From positions 1 to 64,000 of the forward strand of contig NIVC01002331.1 in assembly GCA_002269645.1 (NCBI GenBank): a stretch of DNA of 64,000 nt. The letters run 5' to 3'. This document shows positions 2,889 to 52,444 of this stretch, in pieces. The stretch is from Macrostomum lignano. Lineage: Eukaryota. Below the pieces are notes generated by a model. The model did no database searches and was not told the DNA's origin. It saw only the letters and a program-made list of their open reading frames with translations. The position numbers and the translations under genes are program-made. The first letter of the stretch is position 1; the number at the start of each line of letters is the position of its first letter.

Positions 2889-5118
2889 ATGGATGGCCTG
2901 GATGAACAGGATTTGAAGCGAGCGGAGCTTGATTACTGCCTAAAAAATAGTCTGAACTTCGTAGACACACAGGCGCTTGCCGAAGCCAGGAAAGGTAACG
3001 GCGACGTCAGCGAAGCGGATAATGAAGAGGAAACACCGGATGAGTGGCTCGTGGACGTTCGCTATACAAGCCGGCTGCTCAAGAAGGCAAACGAAATGCG
3101 CATTAAAAAGCGCCTCTGCGACCTCACCATTGGCTTGAAAGACGGCAAGCTGGAGGCGCACAAAAGCATGCTGGCCGCCGGTTCACCTTTCTTCAAGCAT
3201 TTGACGGAAACGACTCGCGCTTCTACGTTAAATTTCTTCCACGTGACCTGCAGCGTGGCGGACATCCTGTTCGACTTTATGTACACCGGTGAGGTCAGCA
3301 TAGAGAAGGCGGAGAAGCTGGGCCGCTCGGAGCGACAAATGCTACGCGAGAAAGCCGAACTGTTCGAAGTTGACCAGCAGCTTCAAGCGCTGTGGGATCG
3401 GCTTGGAGTCGCTACTAAGAACTCCGGCAAGCAGAGCCAGCAGGCAGAGCACCAAGAGGTGCCATTGGAGGATGCCAGTGAAATAGTAAAACGCAAGGTG
3501 AGTTAGCAAGTGCTATTCTTGTAGCACGAAACAAGGCTTGGAGCTGCTCCGGTAAAGTACAAAGTATTGTACATACTCGGCCACTTCCCCGCAGGTTCTC
3601 TACATGAACGATCGTCGAAAACAGGGCGACTTCGCGGACTGGAAGATCCGCATCAGCGCCGTAGACATTCCTGTCAGCAAGGTTTTCCTGGCCGCTAGCA
3701 GCACCTATTTCGCCGACTTCTTTGCCAGAAATCCCATGGAGGCCAAGTCTGAAACTTACACTTTGACGGAGCTTAATCGTCGAACTTTTCGAAAGGTGCT
3801 CAACTTTATTTATACTGGTCACGTGATCACCACGGGACGAGACCTGGCCGAACTCAAGGACCTCCTGTTTCAGGCTAGCTACCTGGGCGTAGGCGATCTA
3901 TCTAGCCGACTTGTGGAGGAGTTCGAGTCGCGTCTTACCACCGAGAACTGCTTTGCAATGTTCTCTTATTCGAACAGCATAAACTGCCGTCAGTTATTTA
4001 AATCGGTCTCGCACTTCATTGGTCGCATGGGCGCCAAGTGGTCTCATAACTCTGGCTTCCTGGGTCTTGAATTCAATGATCTGCGCGCTGCGCTGCTGAA
4101 CCCGGATCTGCGATTCGATGGCGACGACTCTGACTCTGATGAGGAATGCAGCTGCCTTCCCTGGCCAGTCGACTTTGAGTCGCGCACGCTTGACTTGCTC
4201 ATTGCTTGGATCCGCGTTGATCGCGTCCGACGATCAAGTCACGTGACTGAACTGTTCGACCTGGTTGACCGGCTGGGCAGGCTACCGTACACCGGCCGGA
4301 GAGAAGAGATGCACCAACGGCTGCCAGCAGAACTGAACAATGTGATGTCTGCGTACTACTTGAAGCTAATAAAAGAACAGCAAGGAAAAACTTGCCCAAC
4401 CAAGCAACCATCGCCGCAGACCAAACAGTCGCCCATCCGAGCTCGTCGCTACCTGTTTCCCACCCAGCTGCTCATGTCCCGGGAGTTTCACCTAGCGGGT
4501 CCTCAGCTGCCGGGCTCTGCCCTGCTTCCGACAAAATTACAGTCCTCTCCGGATGAGGAAGAGCTCAGAGGCTGCTGGCAACTGTCGCCAACTGAATGGC
4601 GCTTGCAGTCGATTGAAATTCAAGCGTCCGATCAAGAGCTGACTTGGCTATCTGGCCTCAAACTGATCTATCAGCGGTACCCAATGCTCGCTAAGTCTGA
4701 AGATCCCCCAACCGAACTGCGCACCTTCTGCTGCGGTTACCGCGGCTCGTTCCAGCACAGTATCGAACTGGACGAGACGGAGAGAGTGGTTCAGCTTGGC
4801 CTTGGCAGCGCGACTGCTGGCAGCAGCGGCCGCAGAAGTTATATCAGCTGGTTGAAGACCTGCAAGGGTCGACGACTTCAAGTACCAGTGGCGGCGGCAG
4901 CGTCAGAGACGACGAGTGTCAGCAACAGCAACCAGAGCGCCGACGAGAACCCAACTACAGTTGTCAAATCACCGAAGAAAAGTCACGGCTTCTTGCACGG
5001 CTTTGGATTGCGCTTCAGCGAGGCTGGAGGCGGCGCCATGACCATTGTCTGGGCAGTCGAAACCGACGTTGACGGGCTGGGCGACTCTCCTTGGAGCTCT
5101 GTGGTCGAGAATGAATGA
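2889..5118 (+). CDS. Tandem BTB-BTB-BACK protein with C-terminal jacalin-like (beta-prism) domain, 710 aa; exons 2889-3497 and 3595-5118
   Basis: ORF 2889 has BTB motifs (CDLTIG..AHKSMLAAGSPFF..FDFMYTG). Intron 3498-3594 (AAG|gtgagt...ccccgcag|GTT) joins in phase 0 to ORF 3604. That ORF carries a second BTB (FADWKI..VSKVFLAASSTYF..VLNFIYTG) and a BACK region (LTTENCF..LIAWIRVD..). The C-terminal ~170 aa match the jacalin pattern by eye. Confidence 0.88.
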
Positions 5119-5498
5119 GTAGGCACTCATAACCACAACACTAGCTGTAGATCTACTAATTCTGGATTAGGACTGCTACAAAAGGTGAAGCAACGTCCAA
5201 CTAATCGTAGAAATTGTACTAAGCTAAAAGCACTCCTCGTCCAAATAATTTATAATATTTTTATAATTTTGTTTTTTTCAGCAAAACAATCCCATCGCTT
5301 TCTACTAACAGTAGCTAATATGTCTCGTAGAAATGAATATATGCTACGCTCGTAGGCACAAAAATCTTTAAACTCTTGAACCACATCCAAAGCAGGCGTC
5401 GAAACAGTGAGCAACTTTTAAAAATAGAACACTGTGCTACCCTACTTGAGGGTCTTCGTTTTTTGCAATTATATTTTACTTCTGTCCTCGATCTAGTT

Positions 5499-5839
5499 CA
5501 GGGGTCGGCAAATGCGTTTCGCGAGTCACATGCGGCCCGCAAAGACTCTCTATCCGGTCATCGGGTCCTTCGAAACTTCACAATAGCAATCTAGCCCGCT
5601 TAAGGTTTGTGTCTCTTCTCAGCTCACTTTCTCTTCTCTCCTCTCTGCTCTTATCTCTCCTCTCTCCTTTCTCTCCTCTCTCCTTTCTCTCCTCTCTCCT
5701 TTCTCTCCTCTCTCCCTTCTCCTCCTCCTCCCCTCATCTCTCATTTTCTATTCCCTCCTCCTTTTCTCTCTCATCTGGCCCGCAGCCATGAGCTTGATTC
5801 TTAATCTGGCCCTTGAGGTAAAAAAGTTGTCGACCCCTG
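5499..5839 (+). mobile_element. Non-autonomous hAT-type MITE with internal TC-rich tract
   Basis: TIRs caggggtcggcaa / ttgtcgacccctg. Flanks atctagtt (5491-5498) and ctctagtt (5840-5847) form an 8-bp TSD with 7/8 identity, resembling the Charlie-type NTCTAGAN target. Confidence 0.85.
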
Positions 5840-6805
5840 CTCTAGTTCCACCGGTGGTAAGCCCTCCGCAAATGAAGGTAACAATTATTAACACGGCAGA
5901 GATTCTGGGTGTACGCTTGAATGGCTCGCTATGTAGTAATATATCGAAAATTGGTATTTCAATTCCGTCTGCAGCTTTCACTGGTTAGAATGCTAAATAG
6001 CCCGTGTGGGTGGGCTCACCAGCTCATCATCCAGGCACTGAAGTATCAACTCGTGCAGTCAGGCAAACCGGAGTCTGGAATTCATGGAATTTAGGTTTTG
6101 AGACGAGAACTTTCGGGAGAAAAAATACCATCTATAAAAGATTCAGGGATCCTTATCTGCCTGCAGAAGAAAAATACATTAAAAGTACATTGAAAGCAAA
6201 GACATGCTGGGCTAATTGGAGCACAGAAAAAGCCCCTATATAGCAACTAACTAAATAGCATCAATCAATTTATGCTTGTGTGCGTTGCTCCCAGAGCCAG
6301 CTGCTGCGAAGGCTTGTAGGGCGATAGGAGTTACAAATTCATGAAGAGTCTGAGCCGCTGAGTCGGACGCCTTTAGCTGGCGTGCGAAACTTTGCTGTGA
6401 CAGGAAACACACCAACCCCTGTGCTATGTGTGCCTACATAGAATATTTGCTAGCTAGAAAAAAAGTCAAAAGGCAAATGGCTCGCACAACCACTTCTAGC
6501 GAATCAATCAAATCCTGTCATTCATTCTCGATGAGGCTGCAATACATGCAGGCGCAATTTAATGCACTGTAAGCCCCTGACTTGCATGGCGGAGAAAGAG
6601 ATTACGAGTTAGAGTTCTCCGAAGTGCCTTGCTTAGAATGTAACATTTACTGGGTGTGTTGTAACAGTACGCGCTAGAATTACGAAATTGGGAATGTAGC
6701 TACCCTATATATAACGATCCTCTTCTCAACTGCACCAGAGAAGAGGGCTTGCAGCCAAACAGCCAAACATTATTCAACGGATGTTCAATCAAGAAATCGT
6801 TGAAT

Positions 6806-7366
6806 ATCTCTACGAGGGTGAATGATCATGACATGAAACTGTGAGGATGCGTCGTTATCTCTACGAGGGTGAATGATCATGACATGAAACTGTGAGGATG
6901 CGTCGTTATCTCTACGAGGGTGAATGATCATGACATGAAACTGTGAGGATGCGTCGTTATCTCTACGAGGGTGAATGATCATGACATGAAACTGTGAGGA
7001 TGCGTCGTTATCTCTACGAGGGTGAATGATCATGACATGAAACTGTGAGGATGCGTCGTTATCTCTACGAGGGTGAATGATCATGACATGAAACTGTGAG
7101 GATGCGTCGTTATCTCTACGAGGGTGAATGATCATGACATGAAACTGTGAGGATGCGTCGTTATCTCTACGAGGGTGAATGATCATGACATGAAACTGTG
7201 AGGATGCGTCGTTATCTCTACGAGGGTGAATGATCATGACATGAAACTGTGAGGATGCGTCGTTATCTCTACGAGGGTGAATGATCTTGACATGAAACTG
7301 TGAGGATGCGTCGTTATCTCTACGATGGTGAATGATCTTGACATGAAACTGTGAGGATGCGTCGTT
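6806..7366. repeat. 51-bp minisatellite, 11 near-identical copies
   Basis: Unit atctctacgagggtgaatgatcatgacatgaaactgtgaggatgcgtcgtt; on the minus strand it reads RRDNDASSQFHVMIIHP. Confidence 0.97.
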
Positions 7367-9139
7367 TCGTACAGGCGTTATGCCAGTCGAGCAGTCGGCG
7401 AAGTCGAAGGGGTGGGTTAAAAGTATTGATAACACTCGCAAGAGGGCTGTGGCCCCCTGGCCCAACGCTGGCAATTCTGCCCATTCCGCCCGTTTACCGC
7501 TGAGCTGCCCTGCCTCATGAAGTCCGGCGGAAGAAATTCCACAAATTTCCATCCACTATGGTTTCATTTTAAAGCAGAAAAACAGCTTGGAATTGCTACA
7601 GCTGAAGCTGCATGGATTCTGTTCAATAATGGTACTCAACTATAGACTAGTGTGTCACCCGCACACTGGTGTCACAGTGTTACAATGGATGCTTTTGCAG
7701 TTTACAGAGAGCACAATTTTATGATTTTATGACAGAGCGACGACGGAGCTATGAATATTAAAATACATGCCACAGCCCTGTACAGTAGGATGCAGACACG
7801 GAGCCAACACAAGACAGCCAGCCATTACGTCAATTACTTCGCGTGCACTTTTAGCTTGTATCACTAAGGTGGCGCGCAATTTTGCTGATTTGCTTTGTTT
7901 TGAAAAGGAATTTTTTACAAATTATTAAGTATACATGTAACTGTGTAGTTTTGTTCTGGATGATGGAATGATATACCATTCTCAGTATAGATTTCTATCT
8001 ACTGTTTTGACCCTCTCCTCTGTCTACCCCGTCCATCACTCATGTTTAAAGTGTCTTCCCAAGTAGAAAAGTGCAAATCAGCAGCGAATATTCTCGCACA
8101 GGGCACGGCTTGTAGATAGGGAGAAACTTCCAGCCGATCGCGAAGTTTTACAGCGCAACGACCGTGTGCGGTGATCCAGGAAAGTCAATAAACAGTTGTG
8201 CATCAGGGCCGGACCAGCTTACATTCGGAAGAGAGGGTTGGTAACTTTGGAAGAGAATATGCAGTGCAGGAAAAGATGCACTAAAATTTATACATAGTCG
8301 AATGTACATACCATGCCGTGTTTGGTGCACGAATTAGTTTATAGTGCACAGTGAACGCATTGGTGCTGTTTTGGTTGCATTAGCTAGTTGGAAGATAAAA
8401 TAGCGATCCGATCTGAAACGTAAGACAAGGCAAGATAGATGGAGAGAGAAAGAACTATAGCTGGAACTCGATTTTTCGAGTTCCAATTCGGCAGACTGTT
8501 GCCATTCAAGCAGCCGCATTGAGATGCTGGAGCAAGTCATGCACGGAACGCGAGGACTTGGAGAGGGGAGAGTATGGGATTCTGTGGGAGATAGTTCCCC
8601 AAGTCCATAGCCATCGGGTACCGCCGGATTCTCAAGGCTTAATTGGCAGCCCGCCAGACGAGACTGTGACGGTCCAAGTCCCATGAGGGAAAAGTGCAAC
8701 TGGGTGCAGACTGAGCGCAGTTCGGATTTTCTCATCGTTGTGGGAGTGACAGCGGCATGGCCATTTATTGATCCAACGGGATCAATGGCCAATTGATTGA
8801 GCAGTTTGGGGGGCGTCGGCTGCAGCTGTTGTCAGGCTGCCCTGAACCAGCAGAGCTCGTTAACTCGCCGGCTTTTTCCTTGCATGCAGTTGATCGAAAA
8901 TTTCGAAAGTATGAAAAGTCCATACATTTTTGCTAATCAAACGCAAAAGTTCATTAAATTGAGCTAATTTTATAGGGGCGGGTGGGTCATCTCTAACCGA
9001 GAAAGTAGTTAATGAGGATGTTAGGAAGGAAAAATACATTGATATAAAGGTGAAAGTTCAGAATTTTTATCAAGTAAAAGTGTAATAAATTACTTCGTAG
9101 TCTTTAGCTGAAAGTGTCTGTAGCAGCACTCCTTAATCA

Positions 9140-14090: not shown

Positions 14091-16643
14091 TCATACGTAG
14101 CCACTCGGCATCAAGCGATAGTCACAGTTAGTTCTCATGGCCTCGGATTTCGCCCGCCAGAGCCGCTGCTGCGAGCCGCCAGCGGAGGAAATCGTCTCAG
14201 GCGTGGCCGCCCCGCTCCAGCCGTAGGAGGCCGATGACGATAGGAAGAGCAGGTCCCGATGGCTTCTCGCCTCGTGACCGCCTCCGCCACCGTAGCCGCC
14301 TGTTGAAGGCGAAGACGACGCGGTAGTTTCGCTGCGGCTGTCTGCGGCAGCTCGGCTTAACCGCCTGCTGAGCGTGTGCCGCTCCTGGATCTGCTTTTGC
14401 AGGCCGACCGTCTCCTCGCTGGTAGTGAGGTAATAGAGAAAGCGCTTCACGTCTCTGAGTCGCGGCCCTGCCACCTCTACCCGGCGCAGACCATCCGGCA
14501 GGTCTTCCGCCTCTTCTGGCGGGAGCAGACGCAGAGTGCAGCTGTGCCGGCTGGCCAGAGATGCTACCACCGGGTCTAGCAGGAACGCCTCGCTCTGAGC
14601 CAGGCTGCCGCCCGCCCGGATGTGGAAGAAGTAAAACGCTCGCTGACCCGCGGCGCGTCGCTCCACCGGGAGAGGACTCTTGGGCGCCGGGCCGTCGCGC
14701 GGCTGACCGCGCACAGCTGAGAAGGTTCGGCAACGGCGGCGCATCTCAGCTGCGTGACGGACATCCGCGATGCGTCGAGGCTGTGCCGGTGGCTGGCCAA
14801 CAAAGTCCGGCTCCTGTTGTCGATACTGTTGAATGGGCCGGTCCTCGCCGTTAAGCTTTCCGGGACAAGAGTCGCGTCGAACACGGGGCCTGCGCTGGTG
14901 CTCGAAGACCCCAGCGTCGTAGTAGTCGTTGTCTCTTTCGGTATCGATGCACTCGTCGTCATCGTCGCAGAACATGTGCAGCCGCTCAAGGCCTTCAACT
15001 AGTGAGCGACGCTGAGCAAAGTAGCGCGGCCGGTAGAGCACAGTTGGTTGGCTATCAAACACGCGATGACCGCGGCCAGACGCATTTACCGCTGTCTGCG
15101 TCAGCGCCGGAAGAAGGCGCATCCGGGGAACGTCTCGCCTACGCTGGCTGCGGCTGCGACTACGCCGAAGCGTAATGCGGAGCTGCGGAGGCGACGGCGA
15201 TTCTCTGCCGGTATTTGTCCCTACTGTTGACGATGCTTTCGTTGTGGCTGCCGCTGTCTGGCAGGCGTCATCTCGAGAACTTGGTGGCTGGGGACGTCGT
15301 TCAGCTTGAGCCCGAACTGTGCTTCTAGTTTTGGTTCGGCCTCTGGATTGTTCTGTGTTTGTTCGCATTGAGTTGGACGCATCTGCTTCCCGCTCGGATT
15401 TTACTGCCTGCGACTGTTGCCATTGGTCACGCTGTTGTGGCTGCTGCTGTTTTTGTTGTTGTTGTTGTTGTTGCTGTTGCTGTTGTTGCTGTTGTTGCTG
15501 TTGTTGTTGCTGTTGTTGTTGCTGTTGTTGTTGCTGTTCTTGTTGTTGTTGTTGTTGTTGTTGTTGCTGCTGCTGTCGTTGTTGTTGCTGCTGCTGCTGT
15601 TGCAGCTGATTTTGCATTTGCCTTTGTAGCAACTGTTGCTGCTCAAGCATCTTCTGTTGTAGCAGTTTCTGTTGCTGCTGTTGAAAGATTTGAAGCTGAT
15701 GTTGATGCAAGAGGCGCTGCTGTTGAAGCAGCTGCTGCTGATGAGGCGCTTGCTTCAGCTGCTCTTGGTGCTGTAGCAACTGACAATTTGATTGTCGAAA
15801 TGATCTCTGTGTGTTTAACGTCGATTGCCGCTGCTGTTCTGGCTGAGAATTGCACTCCGGCAGTGGCGGGGCGCCCCTCCGACCGCGAATTACAGTCTCA
15901 CTACCCCGCGGCCCAGCTGCAGCTCTGAGAGTGCGGTCATCCGCTGCTTTCTGCTCTATGATTGTGTCAACCTCCAAGTCCATAGCTGACGAATCGTCCT
16001 CCTCTTCCGCTTTAGGCATGACCCGATCGATGCTGCTAGGAAATTGTTGGTGGGCAATTTGCCGCAGCAGGCGCTGCTGTTGCTGCTGTTGCTGTTGGCT
16101 GAGCTGTCGCCTCGGACTCAGCCCATAGTTACCGTGGACTGGACACGGCCGACTATGAGCTGCAGCTGCCGAAGACTGACTTCGCTTAGGGGGCTGATTT
16201 CGACCGGCGCTGGCACTGTCGGACCGCTGCTCAGCTGGCTGAGTACGACCGTCATTGTCGGAATACTCTGGTGGTGGAGGCAGCATCGGTGGCGGAGGCA
16301 GCGGGCGCATTGGTGGCTGAAGGATTGACAGGTCTTCCGTCTGCCGCTTGGCCTGGCCATTTTCAATACAGACAGCGGGAGCAGCAGGCGCATCGGCTCT
16401 AGCAGCACCACCTTGGCCACCGTTGACTCCTTGAGCATCCTGTCGACTCTGATGATGATGCCGCGGTTTGTACAGCGGAGACTCGCAGCCGCCATTGTCA
16501 ACTATGTAGTCTGTGATGACGAAGTTGTAATTCGGCGTCGGCTTCTGGTCGGCTGGCGACACGCCGACTCCGCCGCTGCCGTTGCCAGCGGATCTCTGCT
16601 GCTGGCCGGGCCGTTTGCTCAGTCGAGACTGGCGTGCTCCCAT
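14091..16643 (-). CDS. Intronless 850-aa Gln-rich, largely disordered protein; MGxxxS N-terminus; possible degenerate KH-like domain near the C-terminus
   Basis: 2.55-kb GC-rich ATG-initiated ORF, of which only part is simple repeat. It has a mixed CAA/CAG poly-Q tract (longest run 28 Q, 15453-15536). No family recognised. Confidence 0.8.
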   Translation of the reverse strand: MGARQSRLSKRPGQQQRSAGNGSGGVGVSPADQKPTPNYNFVITDYIVDNGGCESPLYKPRHHHQSRQDAQGVNGGQGGAARADAPAAPAVCIENGQAKRQTEDLSILQPPMRPLPPPPMLPPPPEYSDNDGRTQPAEQRSDSASAGRNQPPKRSQSSAAAAHSRPCPVHGNYGLSPRRQLSQQQQQQQQRLLRQIAHQQFPSSIDRVMPKAEEEDDSSAMDLEVDTIIEQKAADDRTLRAAAGPRGSETVIRGRRGAPPLPECNSQPEQQRQSTLNTQRSFRQSNCQLLQHQEQLKQAPHQQQLLQQQRLLHQHQLQIFQQQQQKLLQQKMLEQQQLLQRQMQNQLQQQQQQQQRQQQQQQQQQQQQEQQQQQQQQQQQQQQQQQQQQQQQQQQQQKQQQPQQRDQWQQSQAVKSEREADASNSMRTNTEQSRGRTKTRSTVRAQAERRPQPPSSRDDACQTAAATTKASSTVGTNTGRESPSPPQLRITLRRSRSRSQRRRDVPRMRLLPALTQTAVNASGRGHRVFDSQPTVLYRPRYFAQRRSLVEGLERLHMFCDDDDECIDTERDNDYYDAGVFEHQRRPRVRRDSCPGKLNGEDRPIQQYRQQEPDFVGQPPAQPRRIADVRHAAEMRRRCRTFSAVRGQPRDGPAPKSPLPVERRAAGQRAFYFFHIRAGGSLAQSEAFLLDPVVASLASRHSCTLRLLPPEEAEDLPDGLRRVEVAGPRLRDVKRFLYYLTTSEETVGLQKQIQERHTLSRRLSRAAADSRSETTASSSPSTGGYGGGGGHEARSHRDLLFLSSSASYGWSGAATPETISSAGGSQQRLWRAKSEAMRTNCDYRLMPSGYV

Positions 16644-37237: not shown

Positions 37238-40200
37238 ATGAGCAGCAGCTGCCAGGCAAACCAGCTGCCATTGTCAGCTAAGAAGCGCCATAATGGCGCG
37301 CCCACCGCCGCCCATACTCAAGAGCCAGCTCTGCCAGAACTTGGCCCGGGCGCCAGAATTTGCGCCATGGCAACCTGCTCTACTGCGGCGCTGCAAAATT
37401 TTTTACTTAGCGCAGGCGCTGGCGCCGCCATTTGCTCGTCATCATCGGCGCCCGCTTCGGCCAGCTGCTCGCCCTGCAAACCTCCGCCTGTCTGTGCTCG
37501 CAACAATTTGACAGCGGCGTCGACTACAAAGACGAATACGGCGGCAACTGCGGGATCGTCGGCTTCGTCTGGCGCGTCAGCTGATTCGTCGGAGTCGCCG
37601 ACGCCGGAGCTGCTGCTGTCAGATGAAGAAGCGGAGGTGAGCGTCGGAGGAAATCAACTGTCTGGTGTGGTGCCGTGAACTGATAAGCTGACGAGGCAGA
37701 CAGCCATAGTTACTCCCATTGGAGTAACTATTGGAGTATCTAACCTCTCTCTCCAGGTGTGCCCCCATGATCCCACAGGATTCTCTCTCTCCAGGTGTGC
37801 CCCCGTGATCTGATTTAATTCTCTCTCTCCAGGTGTGCCCCAGTGATCTGATTTGATTCTCTCTCTCCAGGTGTGCCCTGTGATCCCACAGGATTCTCTC
37901 TCTCCAGGTGTGCCCCCGTGATCCCACAGGATTCTCTCTCTCTCCAGGTGTGCCCCCGTGATCCCACAGGATTCTCTCTCTCTCCAGGTGTGCCCCCGTG
38001 ATCTGATTTGATTCTCTCTCTCTCCAGGTGTGCCCTGTGATCCCACAGGATTCTCTCTCTCCAGGTATGCCCCCGTGATCCCACAGGATTCTCTCTCTCC
38101 AGGTGTGCCCCCGTGATCTGATTTGATTCTCTCTCTCTCCAGGTGTGCCCCCGTGATCTGATTTGATTCTCTCTCTCTCCAGGTGTGCCCCCGTGATCCC
38201 ACAGGATTCTCTCTCTCCAGGTGCACCCCGTGATCCCACAGGATTCTCTCTCTCCAGGTGTGCCCCCGTGATCCCACGGGATTCTCTCTCCCCAGGTGTG
38301 CCCCCGTGATCCCACAGGATTCTCTCTCTCCAGATGTGCCCTGTGATCCCACAGGATTCTCTCTCCAGGTGTGCCCCGTGATCCCACAGGTTTCTCTCTC
38401 CAGGTGTGCCCGTGATCCCGGCTATTTCTGAAAGTATGCGCGACTAATAAAACGTCATTCTCCCATCGCTTTCAAATAACCGCGCAGTCCAAGTCGCAGC
38501 CCGGAGCCGCCGATGACGCCTGCCGCTGCCGGTCCTGCCGATCCCGACGCGCCGCCCAACGGGTCCGCCGGGGCCTCGACCGGCCGAAGCTGCAGCCCGA
38601 AGCGGAGGCCCGCCTGACCGCCCTTGCCGACTGGCTGGCCGAACGGGACCCCGGCGCTCTCTATTCGGCCGCAGAAGAGTTGGGTAGGCAACTGGCGCGC
38701 GAGGCCGGCGCCAGGCTGGCCGAGGCGCTGAAAAAGCTGGCGCCAACTGGCGAGTACAACCGAGACTGCTGCCGCTCCATGACCCGGATACTGCGCGAAG
38801 AATACGAACGGATGCGTAAGGATGCCACTAGGCAGGCTGCGGTTCTCAAGTCGCTGGATACTGCTCATCTCACGCAGTGCGGCCTCAGCTGGCAGTTCAT
38901 GTGCGAGCACTGGTTCCAGAGCCTGGCCTACGGTTGCGCCGAGCTGCGCCAGCTGCAGAACATCATGATGGAGCGCTTGAAGCCCCGGCCGGAGGATCGG
39001 GAGACCCCGTCGCCTATGAAGCTCTACTTAGAGCTGGACGCGAACATGTCGGAGGCTGAGAGTCGATGGCGGCTGGTCCGGCCCCGCCTGCAGAATTGGC
39101 GGGCGCAGCACTGCGCCGTCGGCTTCAGTGGCCTGGCTGAGGAGCTGGCCGGCACTCTGCTCACTGATGAATCTGTTGTACAGCAGCTGTACAAACTGCA
39201 CGTGCAGAGCTCTAGCGAGACGCCTGCTCAGACTTACACCTGCACCAAGTGCAACAAAACTCTATGCGGCTGCTATATGTGCTCATTTACACACTGCGTC
39301 ACCTGCGGCTTCGAGGAGGCCGGCGGAGGCGGCGACGGCGCCGGCAGCAGCAGCGGCGGAGGACGGCGTCGCAAGCGGCACAGCGACGTTGAACTGCGCG
39401 GCTGCTGCTCATCTGGCGAGGAAGAAGCTGCCGACGCTGCGGGCGACTCCGCCGACGCCCATCGCCGTAAAACTGACATCGCCGCCGCCCTGGTTTCGTC
39501 TTCGCTGTGCAAGTCGACGTCGGCTACTGACGCCGCTGTCGTGTCGTCAAATTCAAAGGGCGGCGGCGGCGGCAGCGGCTGCTGCGCCTTTTACTCCGAG
39601 GCCGAGGAGTTCATCAAGGGCAGCAGCGGCGGCCGGTGCCAACATCAGCACCTGCTGCTAGACGCTGCCCAATACCCGCAGAATTATCAGGTGCCGCAGC
39701 ATCAGCATTCGCATCATCAGCCAGCAGCTTCTGACGCCGACAAGGCAACAGGAGACTCGACAACTGGCAATGAAAATGGCCGATTCTGCGACTGCTGCTA
39801 CTGCGAGGTGTTCGGCCACAGCGGCGGACAGCAGCCGGCTGTGCCGCCAAAATTTTTTGAGAAGCGCGAACAGTTGCGCTCGAAATTGCTCCGCAAAAAG
39901 CAGCAGTCGAAGCAGGGGCAGCAGAAGCATCAGCAGCAGCAGCAGCCCGAGCCTCCAAATGACGCTGCTGGTGTCGGTGGCGGCGTCGGAGCGATTTGCC
40001 AATCGTCATCGACCGATATCGACGCTTTAGTGGAGTTCATTGAGGGCGCCAAGGCTGGCAAGGAGCGCGCAGCGAAACGCGAAGTGAAGAAAACCAGACA
40101 GAAGGCGGCGCGCAAAGCGGCTGAACCAGCAGCCACGTCGCCGGCAGCTGGTCGCCAGCGGCAGCAGCAGCAACGTCAGCGAGATGTTGAAAATCAGACT

Positions 40201-41724
40201 CCAGTTCGAGGCGGCAAGCTTCAAGATGCAGCAGACCCCAACAGCGGCAATGGCAGGTCAGCTAACGGAGACAGACAGCGGATGCTGGGCCGCCAGGAAC
40301 TTGGTAATTTTACACTCTAGCTTTTTTCTTTGTTTTATTTAATAAATTAAAATTTATGATTCTCATCACATTCGGAACATTTTCTCTTTTATCCTAAACT
40401 TCCGTTCTTCAATCCTGAACTTCCGTTTTTCTATCTTGAACTTCGGTTCTTCAATCCTGAACTTCCGTTCTTCAATCCTGAACTTCCGTTCTTTTATCCT
40501 GAACTTCCGTTCTTCAATCCTGAACTTCCGTTCTTCAATCCTGAACTTCCGTTCTTCAATCCTGAACTTCCGTTCTTCAATCCTGAACTTCCGTTTTTCT
40601 ATCTTGAACTTCGGTTCTTCAATCCTGAACTTCCGTTCTTCAATCCTGAACTTCCGTTCTTTTATCCTGAACTTCCGTTCTTCAATCCTGAACTTCCGTT
40701 CTTTTATCCTGAACTTCCGTTCTTCAATCCTGAACTTCCGTTCTTCAATCCTGAACTTCCGTTCTTCAATCCTGAACTTCCGTTCTTCAATCCTGAACTT
40801 CCGTTCTTTTATCCTGAACTTCCTTTTTTCAATCCTGAACTTCCGTTCTTCAATCCTGAACTTCCCTTCTTCAATCCTGAACTTCCGTTCTTCAATCCTG
40901 AACTTCCGTTCTTCAATCCTGAACTTCCGTTCTTCAATCCTGAACTTCCGTTCTTCAATCCTGAACTTCTTCCGTTCTTCAATCCTGAACTCCCGTTCTT
41001 TTATCTTGAACTTCGGTTCTTCAATCCTGAACTTCCGTTCCTCTATCCTGAACTTCCTTTCTTCTATCCTGAACTGCCGCTCTATCCTGAACTTCCGTTC
41101 TATCCTGAACTTCCGCTCTTGTATCCTGAACTTTCGTTCTTCTATCCTGAACTTTCGCTCTTCTATCCTGAATTTCGGTTTTTCTTCTGAACTTTCGCAC
41201 CTCTATCCTGAACTAAGTTGATCTCACGCACTCTTTACAGAAGGCTTAAACCGGCGCGATGACCTTGACGACGACCAGCTGTTCGATGACGACGATGTTG
41301 ACCCTGTGGTTGAGCAGTTCAAAAGGTGAGCCTATTATGACGCGTCAGTTCACTCAGTACACTCAACAGTGACCTAGTACACTCAACAGTGACCCAGTAC
41401 ACTCAACAGTGACCCAGTACACTCAACAGTGACCCAGTACACTCAACAGTCACCCAGTACACTCAACAGTGACCTAGTACACTCAACAGTCACCCAGTAC
41501 ACTCAACAGTGACCTAGTACACTCAACAGTCACCCAGTACACTCAACAGTGACCTAGTACACTCAACAGTCACCCAGTACACTCAACAGTCACATAGTAC
41601 ACTTAACATTGACCCATGGCTCTGTATCCGAATTTGCAGTTTTGTGATGAACTGCCAGACGCCAAAGGAGCGCCAAAAAGTGCGACTGGACTTGGACAGC
41701 TTGTCAATGTTAATGAAAAAGTGA
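37238..41724 (+). CDS. FAM193A: FAM193 family protein, ~794 aa; exons 37238-37636, 38488-40303, 41241-41325, 41640-41724
   Basis: All three GT-AG introns join in phase (0, 1, 2) to give 2385 nt. Hallmarks: FCDCCYCEVFGH..KREQLRSKL, IDALVEFIE..RAAKR, DPGALY and the C-terminal VEQFKSFVMNCQTPKERQKVRL, which parallel FAM193A CDCCYCEFFGH..MREKLRLRL, VEDLLQFIN..RAAKR and VEYFKRFCLDS. An additional upstream exon (acceptor at 37208) is possible. Confidence 0.85.
37742..38420. repeat. 37-42-bp minisatellite in FAM193 intron 1
   Basis: Unit (ct)nccaggtgtgcccccgtgat followed by either cccacaggatt or ctgatttgatt. Confidence 0.96.
40396..41212. repeat. 21-bp minisatellite in FAM193 intron 2, ~38 copies
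   Basis: Unit aatcctgaacttccgttcttc. Confidence 0.97.
41352..41605. repeat. 20-bp minisatellite in FAM193 intron 3, ~12 copies
   Basis: Unit agtacactcaacagt(c/g)acc(c/t); same family as 51220-52299. Confidence 0.96.
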
Positions 41725-42635: not shown

Positions 42636-43283
42636 TGCCCTGTATGTTTTTATACTGTTTCTTCGTGTTTTCAAATTTTTCAGCCATTGTTCACTACCCG
42701 CTCACTAGACTACTAATAGCTGTTGGCTAGTAGTATGCGTTGAGAATTTCGACTTCGCCTTCTCTCATACAGATTGTTCACTTTGCGTGCAGTGATGAAA
42801 TCGACAGCTTGTTGTGTAGGTGATAAACAATCATTGCACCATCGGTGTTCATAGTGTCTAAATGCTGGTTTTTTTAAGTTAATTTTATTTGTTTAAATGC
42901 TGACTTGTGCGTAAGGGTTTTCCCCTCATTTTTAAAATTACTGCGAGCTGGCTAATGCGAAATTCTCTATTGATGAGCCCTGCCAGTTTTTGTACTTTCA
43001 CTCCGTTTTTTGTGCTTACATGAATGAAGACTTTATAAATTTGAAGTGAGGCGGCTTTGCAAAAATGTTATAACTGCCGCCTGCGCTGCTCGCGATTGGG
43101 TTAGAAATCTTTGTAGCTCAGCCTTCTTTTTATATAAATATACATACTGCAGCCCCATCTGCCCGGAACAAAGTGAAGCTGTTTTTTACAATAAAAATGC
43201 CTAATTTACACTTTTACCTGCCTTCTGGCATTGGCTTCTTGTTTCATTTCTTTGCCTTTCTTTTCAACTGAGCACAGTTTGTG

Positions 43284-44164
43284 TCACGCTGCAGTTAGCA
43301 CACGGGATGTTAGTGAGGCAGTGCTAATCACACTGCAGTTAGCACACGGGATGTTAGTGAGGCAGTGCTAATCACACTGCAGTTAGCACACAGGAAGTTA
43401 GTGAAGCAGTGCTAATCACACTGCAGTTAGCACACGGGATGTTAGTGAGGCAGTGCTAATCACACTGCAGTTAGCACACGGGATGTTAGTGAGGCAGTGC
43501 TAATCACACTGCAGTTAGCACACAGGAAGTTAGTGAAGCAGTGCTAATCACACTGCAGTTAGCACACGGGATGTTAGTGAGGCAGTGCTAATCACACTGC
43601 AGTTAGCACACGGGATGTTAGTGAGGCAGTGCTAATCACACTGCAGTTAGCACACAGGAAGTTAGTGAAGCAGTGCTAATCACACTGCAGTTAGCACACG
43701 GGATGTTAGTGAGGCAGTGCTAATCACACTGCAGTTAGCACACGGGATGTTAGTGAGGCAGTGCTAATCACACTGCAGTTAGCACACGGGATGTTAGTGA
43801 AGCAGTGCTAATCACACTGCAGTTAGCACACGGGATGTTAGTGAGGCAGTGCTAATCACACTGCAGTTAGCACACGGGATGTTAGTTAGGCAGTGCTAAT
43901 CACACTGCAGTTAGCACACGGGATGTTAGTGAGGCAGTGCTAATCACACTGCAGTTAGCACACGGGATGTTAGTGAAGCAGTGCTAATCACACTGCAGTT
44001 AGCACACGGGATGTTAGTGAAGCAGTGCTAATCACACTGCAGTTAGCACACGGGATGTTAGTGAAGCAGTGCTAATCACACTGCAGTTAGCACACGGGAT
44101 GTTAGTGAAGCAGTGCTAATCACACTGCAGTTAGCACACGGAGTGTTAGTGAAGCAGTGCTAAT
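43284..44164. repeat. 44-bp minisatellite, 20 copies
   Basis: Unit tcacactgcagttagcacacgggatgttagtgaggcagtgctaa; it contains the internal inverted pairs gtgctaa/ttagcac and gcagtg/cactgc. Confidence 0.97.
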
Positions 44165-44721
44165 CAGACTAGGTTTATCGCAGTCAACTTGGCTCAAATA
44201 TTATTCATAATCTTTTCTGTCATTTGGTAGCTCAGACGTACCTACTAAAAGTGCAACTCTGTTGTCTGTTTGTTTGTCTGAATTGCATTTTGATAAAAAA
44301 TGCATAAATAAAGGTTATCTTTCTGCAGCACAGTACTGTATGCATAGGAATTATAAGGTAGACAGAACTGCAAGCTCACAGAGAATGTGTAATAAACTAA
44401 AATGTTTTAGAAAAGTAGAAGTAGAACTTTTGTTAAACTTAGTTATCGTTAGTTGTGCGCTATTGTTAGAGTTTTCTAGTCTCAGAAAATGAACCGCTCA
44501 AAAAGAAGCAAAAAAGAAGGCAATAGAAAAGTCCAAAACAAGAATTGCTTGAATTATCGGCCTGCCTTGCAACTGGCGGTTTTACACACCTACAGCTGCA
44601 ATGATATCAAACTGGTAGGCACATATCTGTATGACAGTCAACCCTTCAATTTTGGAGGGGACACGAACATTTGTATCCTAATTAGGATGGCAGCTCAACA
44701 TCTCATACGAGTACAAGACAC

Positions 44722-44825
44722 AGCGGGTTGTAGCCTAGTGCTCCGAGCATCGGACTCAAGACTGAAAGGTTGGTGCATGGTTCGATTCACGACCCACCCG
44801 AAACAATTTTCGCATCTTTTGTAAG
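44722..44825 (+). mobile_element. Truncated SINE family 1 tRNA-like head (duplicate at ~53833-53930)
   Basis: gtagcctagtgc and ggttcgattc match the 9387 SINE head, followed by aaacaatttt and loss of the core. Confidence 0.65.
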
Positions 44826-45423
44826 CTGGCTAATAGCTGTACACGTTTACTTGAGTCAGCTAGCTTAGTTTAGACAATTTCATTGCTAAAATCTTCTACC
44901 TTTCTGACTATAACGACGACTTCAAACGACTTGATTAACTTCAGTGCTACAAGTCTGACATGGTGACAATTGAACACCGACTTCTGTAGCCAATTTCCAA
45001 GGTCTGCTGCTGCAGTTAACTGAATATTCGCTGTATTTAAGCAAAGTTAATTGAATTTGCTGGCTCTCAGCCTTTGACAAAAGTCTAGCTGGCTTGAATG
45101 TCCAATCCGAGGACTGCTTGCTGGTTTATGAGTCGAGAGTTTCTCAGTTAGAAATCTGCGTGTTGACGTCCATGGCCCTACCTGTTTTTGTTTATCAAAT
45201 ATCTGCTTTTGACCAAGGACCACTAGAAGTTACCGATGTCTCATCAGGACATTTAACGAGGTTTTGCCTTTAAAACAGACTTCATAGTCGTCTGTTGGAA
45301 ATAAACTGATCCATTTAGTTATAAGCTGTTCCTGAGTGTCCCTGATAACAACGGTAACTCCTAGTGGTCCTTGCTTTTAGCTTTGGAGGCCAACAGGCCT
45401 GATCAAATCCTGCTGCCACGCCG

Positions 45424-46828
45424 TCAGGCCCAGCTGGCGAGGTCGCTGCTGATTCTCTTCCGCCAGGCCGCCATCTCGGCTCCGCTGTCGTAGGGCAGAT
45501 CAACCGTGGCGTCGAAGTGCGGCAGCAGGACGCAGTGTTTGCGCAACGGGTTACTATAGAAACCAACGCAGCCGAGGCGCCATTTGCAGGCGAGAGCGCA
45601 GGCCGCCTCGGTGATCTCGCCGTAGGCGCTGACGTCGATCGTCTCGCTGCAGCCCGGCCCGGTCTGCGAGTAGCCTACAATGTCCGCCTGCTCGAATTCG
45701 GCATTGTGCAGCGGCACGCAGCCTGCACCTCCGGCGCCGCCGATGCAGCTGCCAGCCGGGTGCTCGCAGTGGTAGCGCGCGTCCGTCCAGCAGGGGACAT
45801 CGTGCAACCGGTTGGACTCGTTTATGTGCAGCACGCAGTTCTGCACGCCTCCCTGATTGCCGGGCTCTCCGGAGGCCCACCAAGCGGAGCTGGTCAGGTT
45901 CATCTCCCGCAAACCCGGCATCACCTGCGAACATCCGGTTTAGAAAAGAAAACTTTCACTTATATATCAGGATCTTGGAGCCATCATCTCTCAGCAAGGT
46001 TAAACAGTTACTTGTTGAACGGAGGCTTCGGGCTTACCAAGTGAAGCCTCTTTGTTGGCTTTGCGACCAAAGTTCACTTGCAAATGATGCAGCAATGATA
46101 CATACATGTACAACATGCAGTAATATGTACAACATACATGGCAATGCATACAACATACAACTGATAACTAACTGAATACATCTGCCCTAGTGGCCAGATG
46201 TGCAACCGACAGCTCAGCCGCAGCTATTGCGCGGCGCATCTGAAGGCTGCGTACGGCTGTTCAGTCCAAGGACTGGGGGGTCGCCACACACACCCTCAAT
46301 TACCCCAGCTAATTCTGGCACCCATTTTACAGCTGGGTGAACTGAAGCAATGCAGAGTTAAGTGTCTTGTTCAAGGACACAGATTGTTCCAGTGGGGTCG
46401 GTAATCGAAGCCTCGACTCCTATTTTTACATGTAGATAAATACAACATACAACAATATGTACAAAATACACGGCAATGCAACAAACAATCCGCATCACCT
46501 GCCAACCATCGCGACTTCGATTCCGTTCGCGCAGCGCGTCAGTGACGCCCAGGAGAATCCAGCCGCTGGTGAACTGGGGCAGCGGCCTGGCTCGGGCGTA
46601 GGTGTTCGGCGTGAGCAGCCGGTGGCCCAGACGGGCGCAGACGTCCAGAGCGTCGCAGAATTTCAATGTACCGTTGGACACCGGGCTGAGGCAGGTCGGG
46701 GGACCGGCGCTGTCATTCAGTAAGGAGTAACCGGGACTACAGGCGGCATTAGCCGCCGTCTGCTGCGGGAGACACGACAGCAGAAGCAGCAGACACGGGG
46801 CCGCGATGGCAGACACTTTGCACAGCAT
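45424..46828 (-). CDS. Secreted C-type lectin + PAN/apple domain protein, 276 aa (copy A); exons 46828-46499 and 45924-45424
   Basis: Signal peptide MLCKVSAIAAPCLLLLLSC. CTLD cysteines with WILLGVTD..GWQ|VMPG..WASGEPGN..QNCV..LHDVPC..YHCE. PAN pattern AACALACKWRLGCVGF..HCVLL. The intron 46498-45925 is GT-AG, phase 0. Confidence 0.88.
46180..46412 (-). mobile_element. 5'-truncated SINE family 1 inside the lectin intron (duplicate at ~55277-55506)
   Basis: Near-identical to 9140-9330 across the CORE-like and tail regions. Confidence 0.8.
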
Positions 46829-47519
46829 TTTCTCGCCGGCAGTAAGCTTGTCTCGGTATTGGCAAAGCAAACCCTCAAACATTGAAGAGTAATGATGAAT
46901 TGTCTCGGAAAGGCATTTATAAAGAAAGGATGGAGTAAAAATTCTCAGCCAAAGAAGCGTTCTCTCTGCGTCCCCCCCCCAGCCTCTTTTTGTTGGCTGT
47001 TTCTGAGAAATTGCAGCTGCTCTCTCCCCCTCCATAGCCGCCCCTAAGGGATTTTAGTGAAGCAATTGCGGTTGCTTAGCAACATTGCTGTAGCTCTGCA
47101 TCCGTTAGCATTAATTAGTCAGGCAAACTGAACCAACCGTATAGGGACTGAGAAGGATTTGGGCTTGGTAAAATTAAAAATAGGAAGGCAGTAGACTACA
47201 GGCAAAGGCAATCATGCAATCAAAGAAATTTCAATGCATGTAGATTTAAGACTTTATATAGTTGTTTTCCCATTCCGGAAATTTCATTAAATGAGTTTCT
47301 AAGTTCGAGGCTCTTGGTGGAGGACGCTTGCAGTTTGGCTTTACACGATGTGGTAACCATTACCGTACTTTCTGATTATCATCTTCGTGTATTTTATGAG
47401 GTCATTCAACTTGGTTCTCAGTTTCATGCTACCAGCAGTGATACTCCGAGTGCAGCTGCAGTGTCATCCAGTGAGGTATGCTGTTGACGTTCCTGTTTAG
47501 TTTTTAACGTTCTTCCTGC

Positions 47520-47795
47520 CGAAGCGATACGACCCCTGGTTCGATTCCCTTACGCTGCCACATTCATTTGTGGCAATTGTGCACGAAAATTGGCCATGGG
47601 AAGCTTGTCGTACGATTCATACTCACGAGGGCCACGTCCCAAGGCACAGAGAGTGCACATGCTTGACATTTAGACAGTCAGGGCCGCTGTACACCCTGTG
47701 TGAGCGTGTGTGTGAGTGCGTGCTCAGGAGTCAGCGGAATGAGCAGAATTCCCTCAGCGCTGGTTATGGGACATTGTCGCCGAAGGCGTTCATCT
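47520..47795 (+). mobile_element. Diverged SINE family 2 copy (duplicate at ~56595-56878)
   Basis: B box ggttcgattcc. It shares gggccgctgtacac..tgtgtgag..tgctcagg..gcggaatg..gcag with the 36133-36496 SINE. Confidence 0.65.
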
Positions 47796-49714
47796 ATTGA
47801 GACAATATTATTATTGATTTTATCTGCAACAACGATATGGCTTTCTGCTGCGGCGATGCGTGGATGGATACAAATTATAGGACAGCTGCGGCTTCTGCAA
47901 ACTTTTTCTACGCCTACGATCTCGCCCTGCTGTCCACGACCGCTAAAAGGGCGCCTAGACAGCTGAGCAGCCTGTTTGCACCGTTGCGCCTGCATGGATA
48001 TTTTTTGTATTCCATTCGCGCATTGCCAGCAGGGCACGCATGCACCGTGTGTTGCAGAAACGTGACCGAATCACTAACTCTGTCTATTCAGCTGGGCAAA
48101 CGAAACCAGCTATATATGCAAGCTATATACTATATACATATATCTGCATGTATTGTGCAAACCTTGTGGAAATAAATAATCCATTTTTTCTCGTTTAACA
48201 ATTTCTAAGGCATATCATATAGTTGAAACTACATTATAACATTATCGATATTGTGTTAGTATGTGATTATCGAGCGGGGAAAATAAACACTGCATAATAT
48301 TATACATGTACATATACTCTTAGCTCGGTTACGTCATATCATTGCGGCAGGTGTTGCATCTACTATACCCACATGCAGTTTACGGTAAAATGCAGTTGTG
48401 TATTTTTTAAATCTTAATTGAATCTTTATTTGCATGCATGCATACAATACCTTTCATGGGTATTGTAATTTTTGGGTAAAAAAGCGAGTCAAAAAGGGGG
48501 CAGGATCCAATACATGTGGACAAGCCGTTTATTAACTGAACTCAATTTTGAGCTTTTAAGATTCTGCTTCTTCCTCTTCCTGTTTCTTTCTTTAAGGTCC
48601 ACTTATAATAGCATCGTGCGATTGTGTATATGTAAAGACTGTATGCAAATACTACTGAAATACTGTATACGGCTAGGGGCAGGAGACAAACAATTTATGC
48701 GAAATTTATTGAATGCGAATTTTATAAATTATTTACAAATGTCATTGTTTCATGCGGAGCTTCATTTTTACTAGAAAATTCCTCTTTCTTCAAATCCTGA
48801 AGTTGGACTTTCAAAATAACTGTTTAAGGTGCCTTAAAATTTAATGATTAAATTGACGTCGCTGGAAACAGGCAAAGGGTAATAATTATCAGAACTGATA
48901 AGAATATTAGTAGTAGAATAGTAGTAGTAGAATAATAAAAATATGAAATAAATGTAATAATCTAGGACAACTAAAGTAACGTATATTGAGTAGTCCTTGG
49001 TAATAATATTAATATTATTATTTATAAATGTAAGTTAGCGAACAGAATGTTATTTGTTAATTACTTCTGTATTTTATACTACTTCAAGCATTTTCTCACG
49101 GATTCGTTGAACATTAACGTATACATTATAACAAAGAGCAGCAAATCAATCTTTGATCGTGCAGTGTATTTACAAAAGATACTACACAAAAACGTAGAAG
49201 CATGTTATATTTTAGTTTAGTAAATAGATTACTAAAGATTTTTGCTAAAATTACAATCATTTATTTCTAACCAAGCTACACTTTTGATACGGTTTCCGAT
49301 TTACATTTTATGATGTTAGAACATTACATTGAGTGGGCGCATGACCAAGATGGCCACATACCAAGATGGCCACAGCTCTGAATGGCTGCTTGGATAGGAA
49401 TAGGTCTATATATTTCCTCATTTCCTATTGGCTGTGATTGGGGTGGGGTATGTCTAGCTTCAAGTCTCGGAGAAAACAGATTTTGTTAGTGAAATTAGAT
49501 TAGTAAAACAAAAAACACTTCCCTTTACAGCAGGTATTACTACCTACTAAAGCTAGTAGCACTACTAGCACAAGACATTTGATTTTTGTATCATGGATAA
49601 TAGTTTCTAACCTATCTCAATATACCAAAACTGACGTATTGTTTGTATATGTTAAAAGTTAAAGGTAGAGGGTAAAGGTATTAGTTATGATAGAAGTAAG
49701 CAAAAATTGGAGTG

Positions 49715-52299: not shown

Positions 52300-52444
52300 T
52301 ATACATACTGCAGCCCCATCTGCCCGGAACAAAGTGAAGCTGTTTTTTACAATAAAAATGCCTAATTTACACTTTTACCTGCCTTCTGGCATTGGCTTCT
52401 TGTTTCATTTCTTTGCCTTTCTTTTCAACTGAGCACAGTTTGTG

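What the first reader, a model, noticed from the sequence alone, without database searches (positions are those of the whole stretch)
2889..5118. BTB-BTB-BACK protein whose substrate module is a jacalin-like beta-prism instead of Kelch repeats
Seen: one phase-0 intron fuses two complete BTB domains, a BACK region and a C-terminal block. That block has the jacalin strand pattern in order: RLQSIEIQ / LSGLKLIY / HSIELDETERVVQLGLG / ISWLKTCKGRR / GFLHGFGLR / MTIVW. Established: BTB-BACK proteins are Cul3 adaptors, usually ending in Kelch or PHR domains, and lectin-type E3 adaptors are known mainly as F-box Fbs proteins. Inference: this could be an undescribed Cul3 adaptor with a lectin fold. The canonical GxxxD sugar loop is not evident, so it may bind protein rather than glycan.
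Basis: partly seen in the sequence, partly recalled or inferred. Interest (0 to 1): 0.72.

Follow-up and report, generated by a model that had tools for sequence, protein, structure and literature searches.

The report
Flatworm tandem-BTB protein, orphan C-terminal tail
This is a real two-exon gene of the flatworm Macrostomum lignano encoding a BTB-BTB-BACK protein, probably a ubiquitin-ligase adaptor, whose C-terminal third has no detectable relatives anywhere; the proposed jacalin lectin fold could be neither confirmed nor excluded.

Summary
The gene model is correct. Exon 1 (2889-3497), a 97-nt GT..AG phase-0 intron and exon 2 (3595-5118) give a 710-aa protein identical to GenBank PAA58793.1 of Macrostomum lignano, whose annotation is RNA-seq based. 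Pfam confirms two BTB domains (68-163, 207-312) and a BACK domain (from 322), with no Kelch repeats. BTB2-BACK aligns with the Cul3 adaptors KBTBD2 and KLHL3.

The C-terminal block (about 527-700) is an orphan. An exhaustive phmmer search of 1.84 billion representative proteins found only the protein itself and one spurious hit. Pfam, NCBIfam, PDB sequences and a metagenome scan gave nothing, and Pfam Jacalin did not hit even at E<=10.

AlphaFold2 had no alignment to work from and failed (pLDDT 33), so the fold test could not be made.

Standard scoring does not make it significant (p about 0.06-0.11). Loop-tolerant scoring does (p about 0.005), but only with plant banana-lectin-type sequences. 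The independent tests failed: bacterial-type profile p about 0.33, human ZG16 p about 0.15.

Verdict: an ordinary lineage-specific BTB-BACK protein with a tail of unknown fold. The jacalin reading is an unproven lead (about 0.2).

The parts
2889..3497 (+). Exon 1 (codons 1-203): N-terminal acidic leader plus BTB domain 1
   Evidence: ORF with an in-frame upstream stop and a GTGAGT donor at 3498; matches PAA58793.1
3090..3377 (+). BTB/POZ domain 1 (residues 68-163), most similar to ZBTB-type BTB domains
   Evidence: Pfam PF00651 E 1.2e-14, 54.8 bits, profile 2-97 of 110; PDB hits to Kaiso, ZBTB17 and PLZF over residues 55-141
3498..3594 (+). Phase-0 intron, 97 nt, GT..AG, with an in-frame TAG after two codons
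   Evidence: Against three other genomic copies it carries 2 substitutions and a 6-bp indel in 97 nt, versus 8 substitutions in 2133 exonic nt
3595..5118 (+). Exon 2 (codons 204-710 plus stop)
   Evidence: continuous 504-aa ORF in frame with exon 1
3604..3921 (+). BTB/POZ domain 2 (residues 207-312), KLHL/KBTBD type; the loop that holds the phi-x-E Cul3 contact reads P250-M251-E252
   Evidence: Pfam PF00651, 65 bits, profile 1-105 of 110; alignment to KBTBD2 and KLHL3
3949..4263 (+). 3-box/BACK domain (residues 322 to about 426), interrupted by an acidic insert DGDDSDSDEE
   Evidence: Pfam PF07707, 30 bits against cut-off 20.9, two stretches; PDB alignment to KLHL3 and KBTBD2 reaches residue 415-426
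4381..4563 (+). P/Q/S/T/K-rich linker (residues 466-526), probably disordered
   Evidence: Composition: G+P+S+T fraction 0.38, few hydrophobic residues; no family hit
4564..5085 (+). Orphan C-terminal block (residues 527-700) holding the six quoted motifs; fold undetermined, presumed substrate-binding module
   Evidence: No relatives among 1.84e9 representative proteins; none in PDB, Pfam, NCBIfam or metagenomes; AlphaFold2 pLDDT 33; weak plant-jacalin-like colinear alignment
4876..4986 (+). Low-complexity A/S/T/N-rich insert (residues 631-667) inside the C-terminal block
   Evidence: Sequence; mostly unaligned in the jacalin alignments: its central 26 residues fall in a gap

Best explanation
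This is a genuine, expressed, two-exon gene of the flatworm Macrostomum lignano (Mlig019819). It encodes a 710-aa protein with two BTB domains, a 3-box/BACK domain, a disordered linker and a roughly 175-residue C-terminal block restricted to this lineage. Most likely mechanism, inferred by homology and not shown: BTB2 with the 3-box/BACK dimerises and docks on Cullin-3, as in KLHL and KBTBD adaptors. The extra ZBTB-like BTB1 adds a second self-association surface. The C-terminal block is the substrate-recognition end. The fold of that block is unknown. Its resemblance to jacalin-related lectins is a weak lead that was not replicated, not an assignment.
For: Gene model: canonical splice sites and phase; exact identity to the GenBank protein, whose annotation derives from RNA-seq-guided transcript assembly plus TransDecoder (PMC5730564). 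Sequence differences between genomic copies are concentrated in the intron. Domains: BTB twice and BACK, all above Pfam cut-offs. BTB2-BACK aligns over about 200 residues with the Cul3 adaptors KBTBD2 (E 1e-12) and KLHL3 (E 4e-11, an entry solved with Cul3), with the Glu of the phi-x-E loop conserved. No Kelch, PHR, MATH or other domain was found. Orphan tail: exhaustive phmmer returned only the protein itself and a helical-repeat artefact; PDB, Pfam, NCBIfam and metagenome searches were negative. The long open frame, with stops in the other frames, shows the tail is coding.
Against: Cul3 binding is inferred only. The phi position of the phi-x-E motif is Pro (P250-M251-E252), which is atypical. 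BTB1 resembles transcription-factor BTBs. No orthologue was recovered even for the N-terminal part, so no conservation argument is possible. The genomic copies are identical across the tail, so selection on it cannot be measured. The colinear match to plant jacalins (z about 3.5) could mean the tail is in fact a jacalin-like domain.
Confidence: 0.6

Rival explanations
1. One reading: the C-terminal block (about 527-700) is a highly divergent jacalin-like beta-prism with three enlarged loops. That would make the protein a Cul3 adaptor with a lectin-fold substrate module, which binds protein or glycan.
For: Loop-tolerant alignment beats shuffles (9 of 2000), block shuffles (2 of 300), the reversed sequence and 72 natural decoy windows, scoring 28.6 against a decoy maximum of 26.7. 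With the plant-only profile z is 3.5-4.2. After removing the three loops (567-575, 608-616, 633-658) the length of about 130 residues fits a jacalin domain.
Against: Pfam Jacalin gave no hit at E<=10, with or without the loops. Standard scoring is not significant (p 0.06-0.11). The signal is confined to plant banana-lectin-type sequences, the consensus that prompted the finding. The non-plant profile gives p=0.33, hhalign P=0.6 and a different register. Human ZG16 gives phmmer p=0.155 and z 0.35-1.4. The loop trimming that raises the score was guided by the alignment itself. The GG loop and the GxxxD sugar-binding loop are absent. A p of about 0.005-0.01 for one family chosen post hoc out of about 25,000 carries little weight.
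Confidence: 0.2
2. The tail is not an autonomous known domain. It is either a new small beta-rich fold or a largely disordered region with short interaction motifs, which arose and evolves fast within Macrostomum.
For: No homologue in 1.84e9 representatives. About a third of the block is G/P/S/T, and it contains low-complexity stretches at 608-616 and 631-667. AlphaFold2 gives no confident structure.
Against: Single-sequence AlphaFold2 also failed on the bona fide BTB domains, so low confidence says nothing about disorder. The block has regularly spaced hydrophobic segments, and the ORF is kept intact in all four genomic copies.
Confidence: 0.45
3. The protein is not a Cul3 adaptor but a BTB-mediated oligomeric scaffold or nuclear regulator.
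For: BTB1 is closest to ZBTB transcription-factor BTB domains. The phi residue of the Cul3-contact motif in BTB2 is Pro.
Against: There are no zinc fingers or DNA-binding domains. BTB2 is followed by a 3-box/BACK, the hallmark of Cul3-binding KLHL/KBTBD proteins, and aligns best with them.
Confidence: 0.15

Closest known systems
KLHL/KBTBD BTB-BACK-Kelch Cul3 substrate adaptors (e.g. KBTBD2, KLHL3, gigaxonin)
   Same: BTB2, the 3-box and BACK align over about 200 residues (E 1e-12 to 4e-11). The Glu of the phi-x-E Cul3 contact loop is conserved.
   Different: No Kelch propeller. An additional N-terminal BTB domain. An orphan C-terminal block. Pro at the phi position.
Tandem-BTB proteins (BTBD7, BTBD8, LZTR1, IBTK, ABTB2), recalled from my own knowledge
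   Same: Two BTB domains followed by a BACK-like region in one polypeptide.
   Different: No sequence relationship could be tested, because searches returned no orthologues. Orthology is not claimed.
Jacalin-related lectins (banana lectin 1X1V, ZG16 3APA; Pfam PF01419)
   Different: Below every standard threshold. Not reproduced with bacterial-type or animal ZG16 sequences. The GG and GxxxD sugar-binding loops are absent. The alignment needs three inserts of 9, 9 and 26 residues.
Lectin-type E3 substrate receptors (F-box Fbs/FBXO2 family with the FBA sugar-binding domain), a conceptual analogue from my own knowledge
   Same: If the jacalin reading were true, a cullin-RING adaptor would use a lectin fold for recognition.
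   Different: Different cullin adaptor class (F-box/Skp1/Cul1 versus BTB/Cul3) and an unrelated fold. No evidence here for glycan binding.

Membership tests
BTB/POZ domain proteins (PF00651) | Match to the BTB profile above the gathering score | tested here: met
   Two domains: residues 68-163 (54.8 bits) and 207-312 (65.2 bits), cut-off 20.5
BTB-BACK (KLHL/KBTBD-type) proteins | BACK/3-box domain (PF07707) directly after the BTB | tested here: met
   Starts at residue 322; 30.1 bits against cut-off 20.9 on the isolated segment and 24.2 bits in the whole protein. Aligns with KBTBD2 and KLHL3 BACK.
BTB-BACK-Kelch (KLHL) family | C-terminal Kelch-repeat propeller | tested here: not met
   No Kelch family hit at E<=10 in the whole protein or the tail
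Cul3 substrate adaptors | phi-x-E motif in the BTB alpha3-beta4 loop and a 3-box contacting Cul3 | tested here: inconclusive
   The aligned motif is P250-M251-E252: the Glu is kept but phi is Pro. The 3-box region aligns with KBTBD2.
Cul3 substrate adaptors | Physical binding to Cullin-3 and substrate ubiquitylation | not testable with these tools
   Needs a pull-down or two-hybrid test
Jacalin-like lectin domain (PF01419) | Match to the family profile at or near the curated threshold | tested here: not met
   No Pfam Jacalin hit at E<=10 for the tail or three loop-trimmed variants. My own 49-sequence profile scored -0.4 bits, p=0.063; hhalign probability was 0.5%.
Jacalin-like lectin domain (PF01419) | Similarity reproducible across independent subfamilies (plant, bacterial, animal ZG16) | tested here: not met
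   Plant profile p=0.01, z 3.5-4.2. Non-plant profile p=0.33, z 0.1-2.0. ZG16 p=0.155, z 0.35-1.4.
Jacalin-like lectin domain (PF01419) | Beta-prism I fold (three four-stranded Greek keys) | tested here: inconclusive
   AlphaFold2 without an alignment gave pLDDT 33 for the whole protein and for residues 520-710. The models were too poor for Foldseek.
Jacalin-like lectin domain (PF01419) | Sugar-binding loops: N-terminal GG and C-terminal GxxxD | tested here: not met
   In the hhalign and Smith-Waterman alignments the GG loop is deleted or replaced (GCWQL). GDFID aligns with GL(R)FSE in hhalign and is largely gapped in the Smith-Waterman alignment; neither gives a GxxxD.

The most novel reading that the evidence does not exclude
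The orphan tail is a very divergent jacalin-like beta-prism fused to a tandem BTB-BACK module. That would be an animal Cul3 adaptor recognising its substrates, protein or glycan, through a lectin fold, a combination not described in the papers I could search.
Probability: 0.17. Interest if true: 0.55.

Novelty: new member of a known kind. Interest (0 to 1): 0.22.

Why it matters
BTB-BACK proteins with non-Kelch, lineage-specific C-terminal ends are common. They are how Cul3 ligases acquire new substrates, so one more uncharacterised flatworm example is of modest interest. It would matter more if the tail proved to be a lectin fold: that would extend lectin-type substrate recognition from F-box (Fbs) ligases to Cul3 ligases. 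There is also a methodological point. The motif-by-eye match to the plant jacalin consensus survives only when tested against that same consensus. It fails against independent jacalin subfamilies.

Tried and rejected
(1) Word-indexed homologue searches with the full protein and with residues 51-465 returned only the protein itself and two Kelch proteins at E 0.08, so no orthologues and no alignment for modelling.

(2) Exhaustive phmmer on residues 471-710 gave one extra hit, P0004. It is a GBP-like protein with eight helical repeats, whose score is inflated by the repetition. I rejected it as spurious.

(3) AlphaFold2 on a single sequence, run on the whole protein and on residues 520-710, gave pLDDT 33 both times. 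Even the BTB domains failed, so the result is uninformative. I did not run Foldseek on such models.

(4) I chose not to feed AlphaFold2 an alignment that forces the tail onto jacalin sequences. The alignment would dictate the fold.

(5) The sub-threshold Pfam hit to EACC1 (E 0.01) vanishes when the low-complexity loop is trimmed, so I treated it as chance.

(6) Trimming three loops raises the jacalin score (7.2 bits, hhalign P 0.004). I discounted this because the cuts were guided by the alignment.

(7) Hydrophobic-moment and Chou-Fasman propensity profiles did not separate the tail from the helical BTB/BACK regions.

(8) A metagenome scan found no relatives. NCBIfam found nothing.

(9) Comparison of the four genomic copies showed no substitutions in the tail, so no dN/dS estimate is possible.

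(10) Literature searches for BTB + jacalin and for Mlig019819 turned up nothing relevant.

Full report
**Source and gene model.** The window is genomic DNA of the free-living flatworm Macrostomum lignano. The region holds a two-exon gene.
- The ATG is at 2889, preceded by an in-frame TAG at 2883-2885.
- Exon 1 runs to 3497 (609 nt, 203 codons).
- A 97-nt intron follows (3498-3594, GTGAGT...CCCCGCAG). It is phase 0 and has an in-frame stop after two codons.
- Exon 2 runs from 3595 to the TGA at 5116-5118.

The spliced 710-aa product is identical to GenBank PAA58793.1, 'hypothetical protein BOX15_Mlig019819g1', which UniRef names a BTB domain-containing protein. The GenBank annotation of this genome comes from a genome-guided RNA-seq transcript assembly (StringTie/TACO plus a mapped de novo transcriptome) with ORFs called by TransDecoder (PMC5730564). 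The junction therefore has indirect RNA support.

Three other genomic copies (contigs NIVC01004564, NIVC01000803, NIVC01005005) encode a protein that differs at two residues, H188R and M348I. At the DNA level they differ from the window by 8 substitutions in 2133 exonic nt. The 97-nt intron alone carries 2 substitutions and a 6-bp indel, as expected for an intron.

**N-terminal two-thirds.** Pfam finds two near-complete BTB domains and a BACK domain:
- BTB1: residues 68-163, profile positions 2-97 of 110, 54.8 bits.
- BTB2: residues 207-312, profile positions 1-105 of 110, 65.2 bits.
- BACK: begins at residue 322, 30.1 bits against a cut-off of 20.9. It is split by an acidic insert.

No Kelch, PHR, MATH or other domain appears, even at E<=10. 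In the PDB, BTB1 is closest to ZBTB-type domains (Kaiso, ZBTB17, PLZF). BTB2-BACK aligns over about 200 residues with the Cul3 adaptors KBTBD2 (E 1e-12) and KLHL3 (E 4e-11). In that alignment the Cul3-contact phi-x-E loop reads P250-M251-E252, so the Glu is kept but phi is Pro. A Cul3-adaptor role is therefore a reasonable inference from homology. It is not shown here.

**C-terminal third: searches.** After a P/Q/S/T/K-rich linker (residues 466-526) comes a block of about 175 residues (527-700). It also contains a low-complexity A/S/T/N-rich insert at 631-667. The block is an orphan:
- Exhaustive phmmer with residues 471-710 against 1.84 billion representative proteins returned only the protein itself and P0004. 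P0004 is a GBP-like protein whose eight helical repeats inflate a spurious local match.
- No PDB sequence matched at E<=10.
- Pfam and NCBIfam gave nothing. The one exception is a sub-threshold EACC1 hit that disappears when the low-complexity loop is removed.
- A metagenome scan found no relatives.
- Word-indexed searches found no orthologue even for the BTB part.

**Fold test.** It could not be done. With no homologues, AlphaFold2 ran on a single sequence and failed for the whole protein and for residues 520-710 (mean pLDDT 33 in both). The bona fide BTB domains failed too, so the low confidence says nothing about the tail. I did not run Foldseek on these models.

**Sequence tests of the jacalin idea.** I built a jacalin profile from 49 domains related to banana lectin.
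- *Standard scoring is not significant.* hmmsearch with filters off gave -0.4 bits, with 63 of 1000 shuffles doing as well. hhalign gave probability 0.5%, P=0.11, with 23 of 300 shuffles doing as well.
It needs inserts of 9, 9 and 26 residues.
- *Loop-tolerant scoring does better.* With my own dynamic-programming alignment the real sequence beats 1991 of 2000 shuffles (9 scored as high or higher) and 298 of 300 block shuffles. It also beats its own reverse and 72 windows of unrelated natural proteins. The margin over the best natural decoy is small, 28.6 against 26.7.
- *Deleting the three loops raises the score.* It reaches 7.2 bits and hhalign P 0.004. Those cuts were guided by the alignment, so the gain is biased.

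**The signal does not replicate.** Splitting the profile shows that it comes only from plant banana-lectin-type sequences.

| Comparison | hmmsearch/phmmer shuffle p | hhalign P | Loop-tolerant z |
|---|---|---|---|
| Plant-only profile | 0.01 | 0.07 | 3.5-4.2 |
| Ten bacterial/metagenomic jacalin domains | 0.33 | 0.6 (different register) | 0.1-2.0 |
| Human ZG16, the animal jacalin-like lectin | 0.155 | not run on the untrimmed block | 0.35-1.4 |

The loop-trimmed construct is also null against both independent comparators: hhalign P is 0.67 for the bacterial profile and 0.27 for ZG16.

The plant consensus is what a reader would recognise by eye, so its p-values are post hoc. The independent subfamilies are the fair test, and they fail. 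The GG and GxxxD sugar-binding loops are also absent. A p of 0.005-0.01 against one family picked out of about 25,000 is weak evidence. I put the jacalin reading at about 0.2: not excluded, not supported.

**Conclusion.** This is a real gene for a tandem BTB-BTB-BACK protein. It is most likely a Cul3 adaptor or BTB scaffold, with a fast-evolving, lineage-restricted C-terminal block of unknown fold that presumably binds its targets. BTB-BACK proteins with non-Kelch ends are a known kind, and the protein is already catalogued as an uncharacterised BTB protein. Whether BTB+jacalin architectures exist elsewhere could not be checked, because no architecture search was available. Literature searches found none. 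The way forward is an alignment of Macrostomum orthologues for AlphaFold and HHpred, followed by biophysics of residues 520-710 and a Cul3 pull-down.

Noticed in passing
window 6805-7366 (within minus-strand ORF 6785-7552): A 51-bp tandem repeat, 11 copies at 99% identity, lies inside a 255-aa ORF on the minus strand. 51 is a multiple of 3, so it could encode a 17-residue peptide repeat. It gave only sub-threshold Pfam hits.
   Followed up: partly
window 5630-5742: A (TCTCCTC)n / 16-mer CT-rich microsatellite lies about 500 nt downstream of the gene's stop codon.
   Followed up: no
window ~43150-48800 and ~52300-57850: A tandem segmental duplication of about 9.1 kb at 98-100% identity. Each copy begins with a 44-bp satellite array (43152-44287 and 52313 to about 53100). 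A long 20-bp satellite array (51080 to about 52400) lies between them. This fits the known redundancy of the M. lignano assembly.
   Followed up: partly
window 59928-60821 (+): An exon-like ORF encodes a PKA regulatory-subunit-like protein, with an RIIa dimerisation/docking domain (E 1.7e-14) and a cyclic-nucleotide-binding domain (E 2.4e-15).
   Followed up: partly
window 14091-16643 (-) and 38680-40320 (+): Long ORFs of 850 and 546 aa have no Pfam match at E<=0.001. Their nature (gene, repeat element or chance) was not examined.
   Followed up: no
window 4780-4950 (protein residues ~599-655): A sub-threshold Pfam hit to EACC1 (PF19953; E about 0.01, 16 bits, cut-off 23.6) overlaps the low-complexity insert. 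It disappears when that insert is removed and is probably a composition artefact.
   Followed up: yes
L001-L003 (NIVC01004564, NIVC01000803, NIVC01005005), gene at 3001-5236: Three further genomic copies of the gene are identical to each other over the gene. They differ from the window copy by 8 exonic substitutions and a 6-bp intron indel, consistent with recent genome duplication or assembly redundancy in M. lignano.
   Followed up: yes
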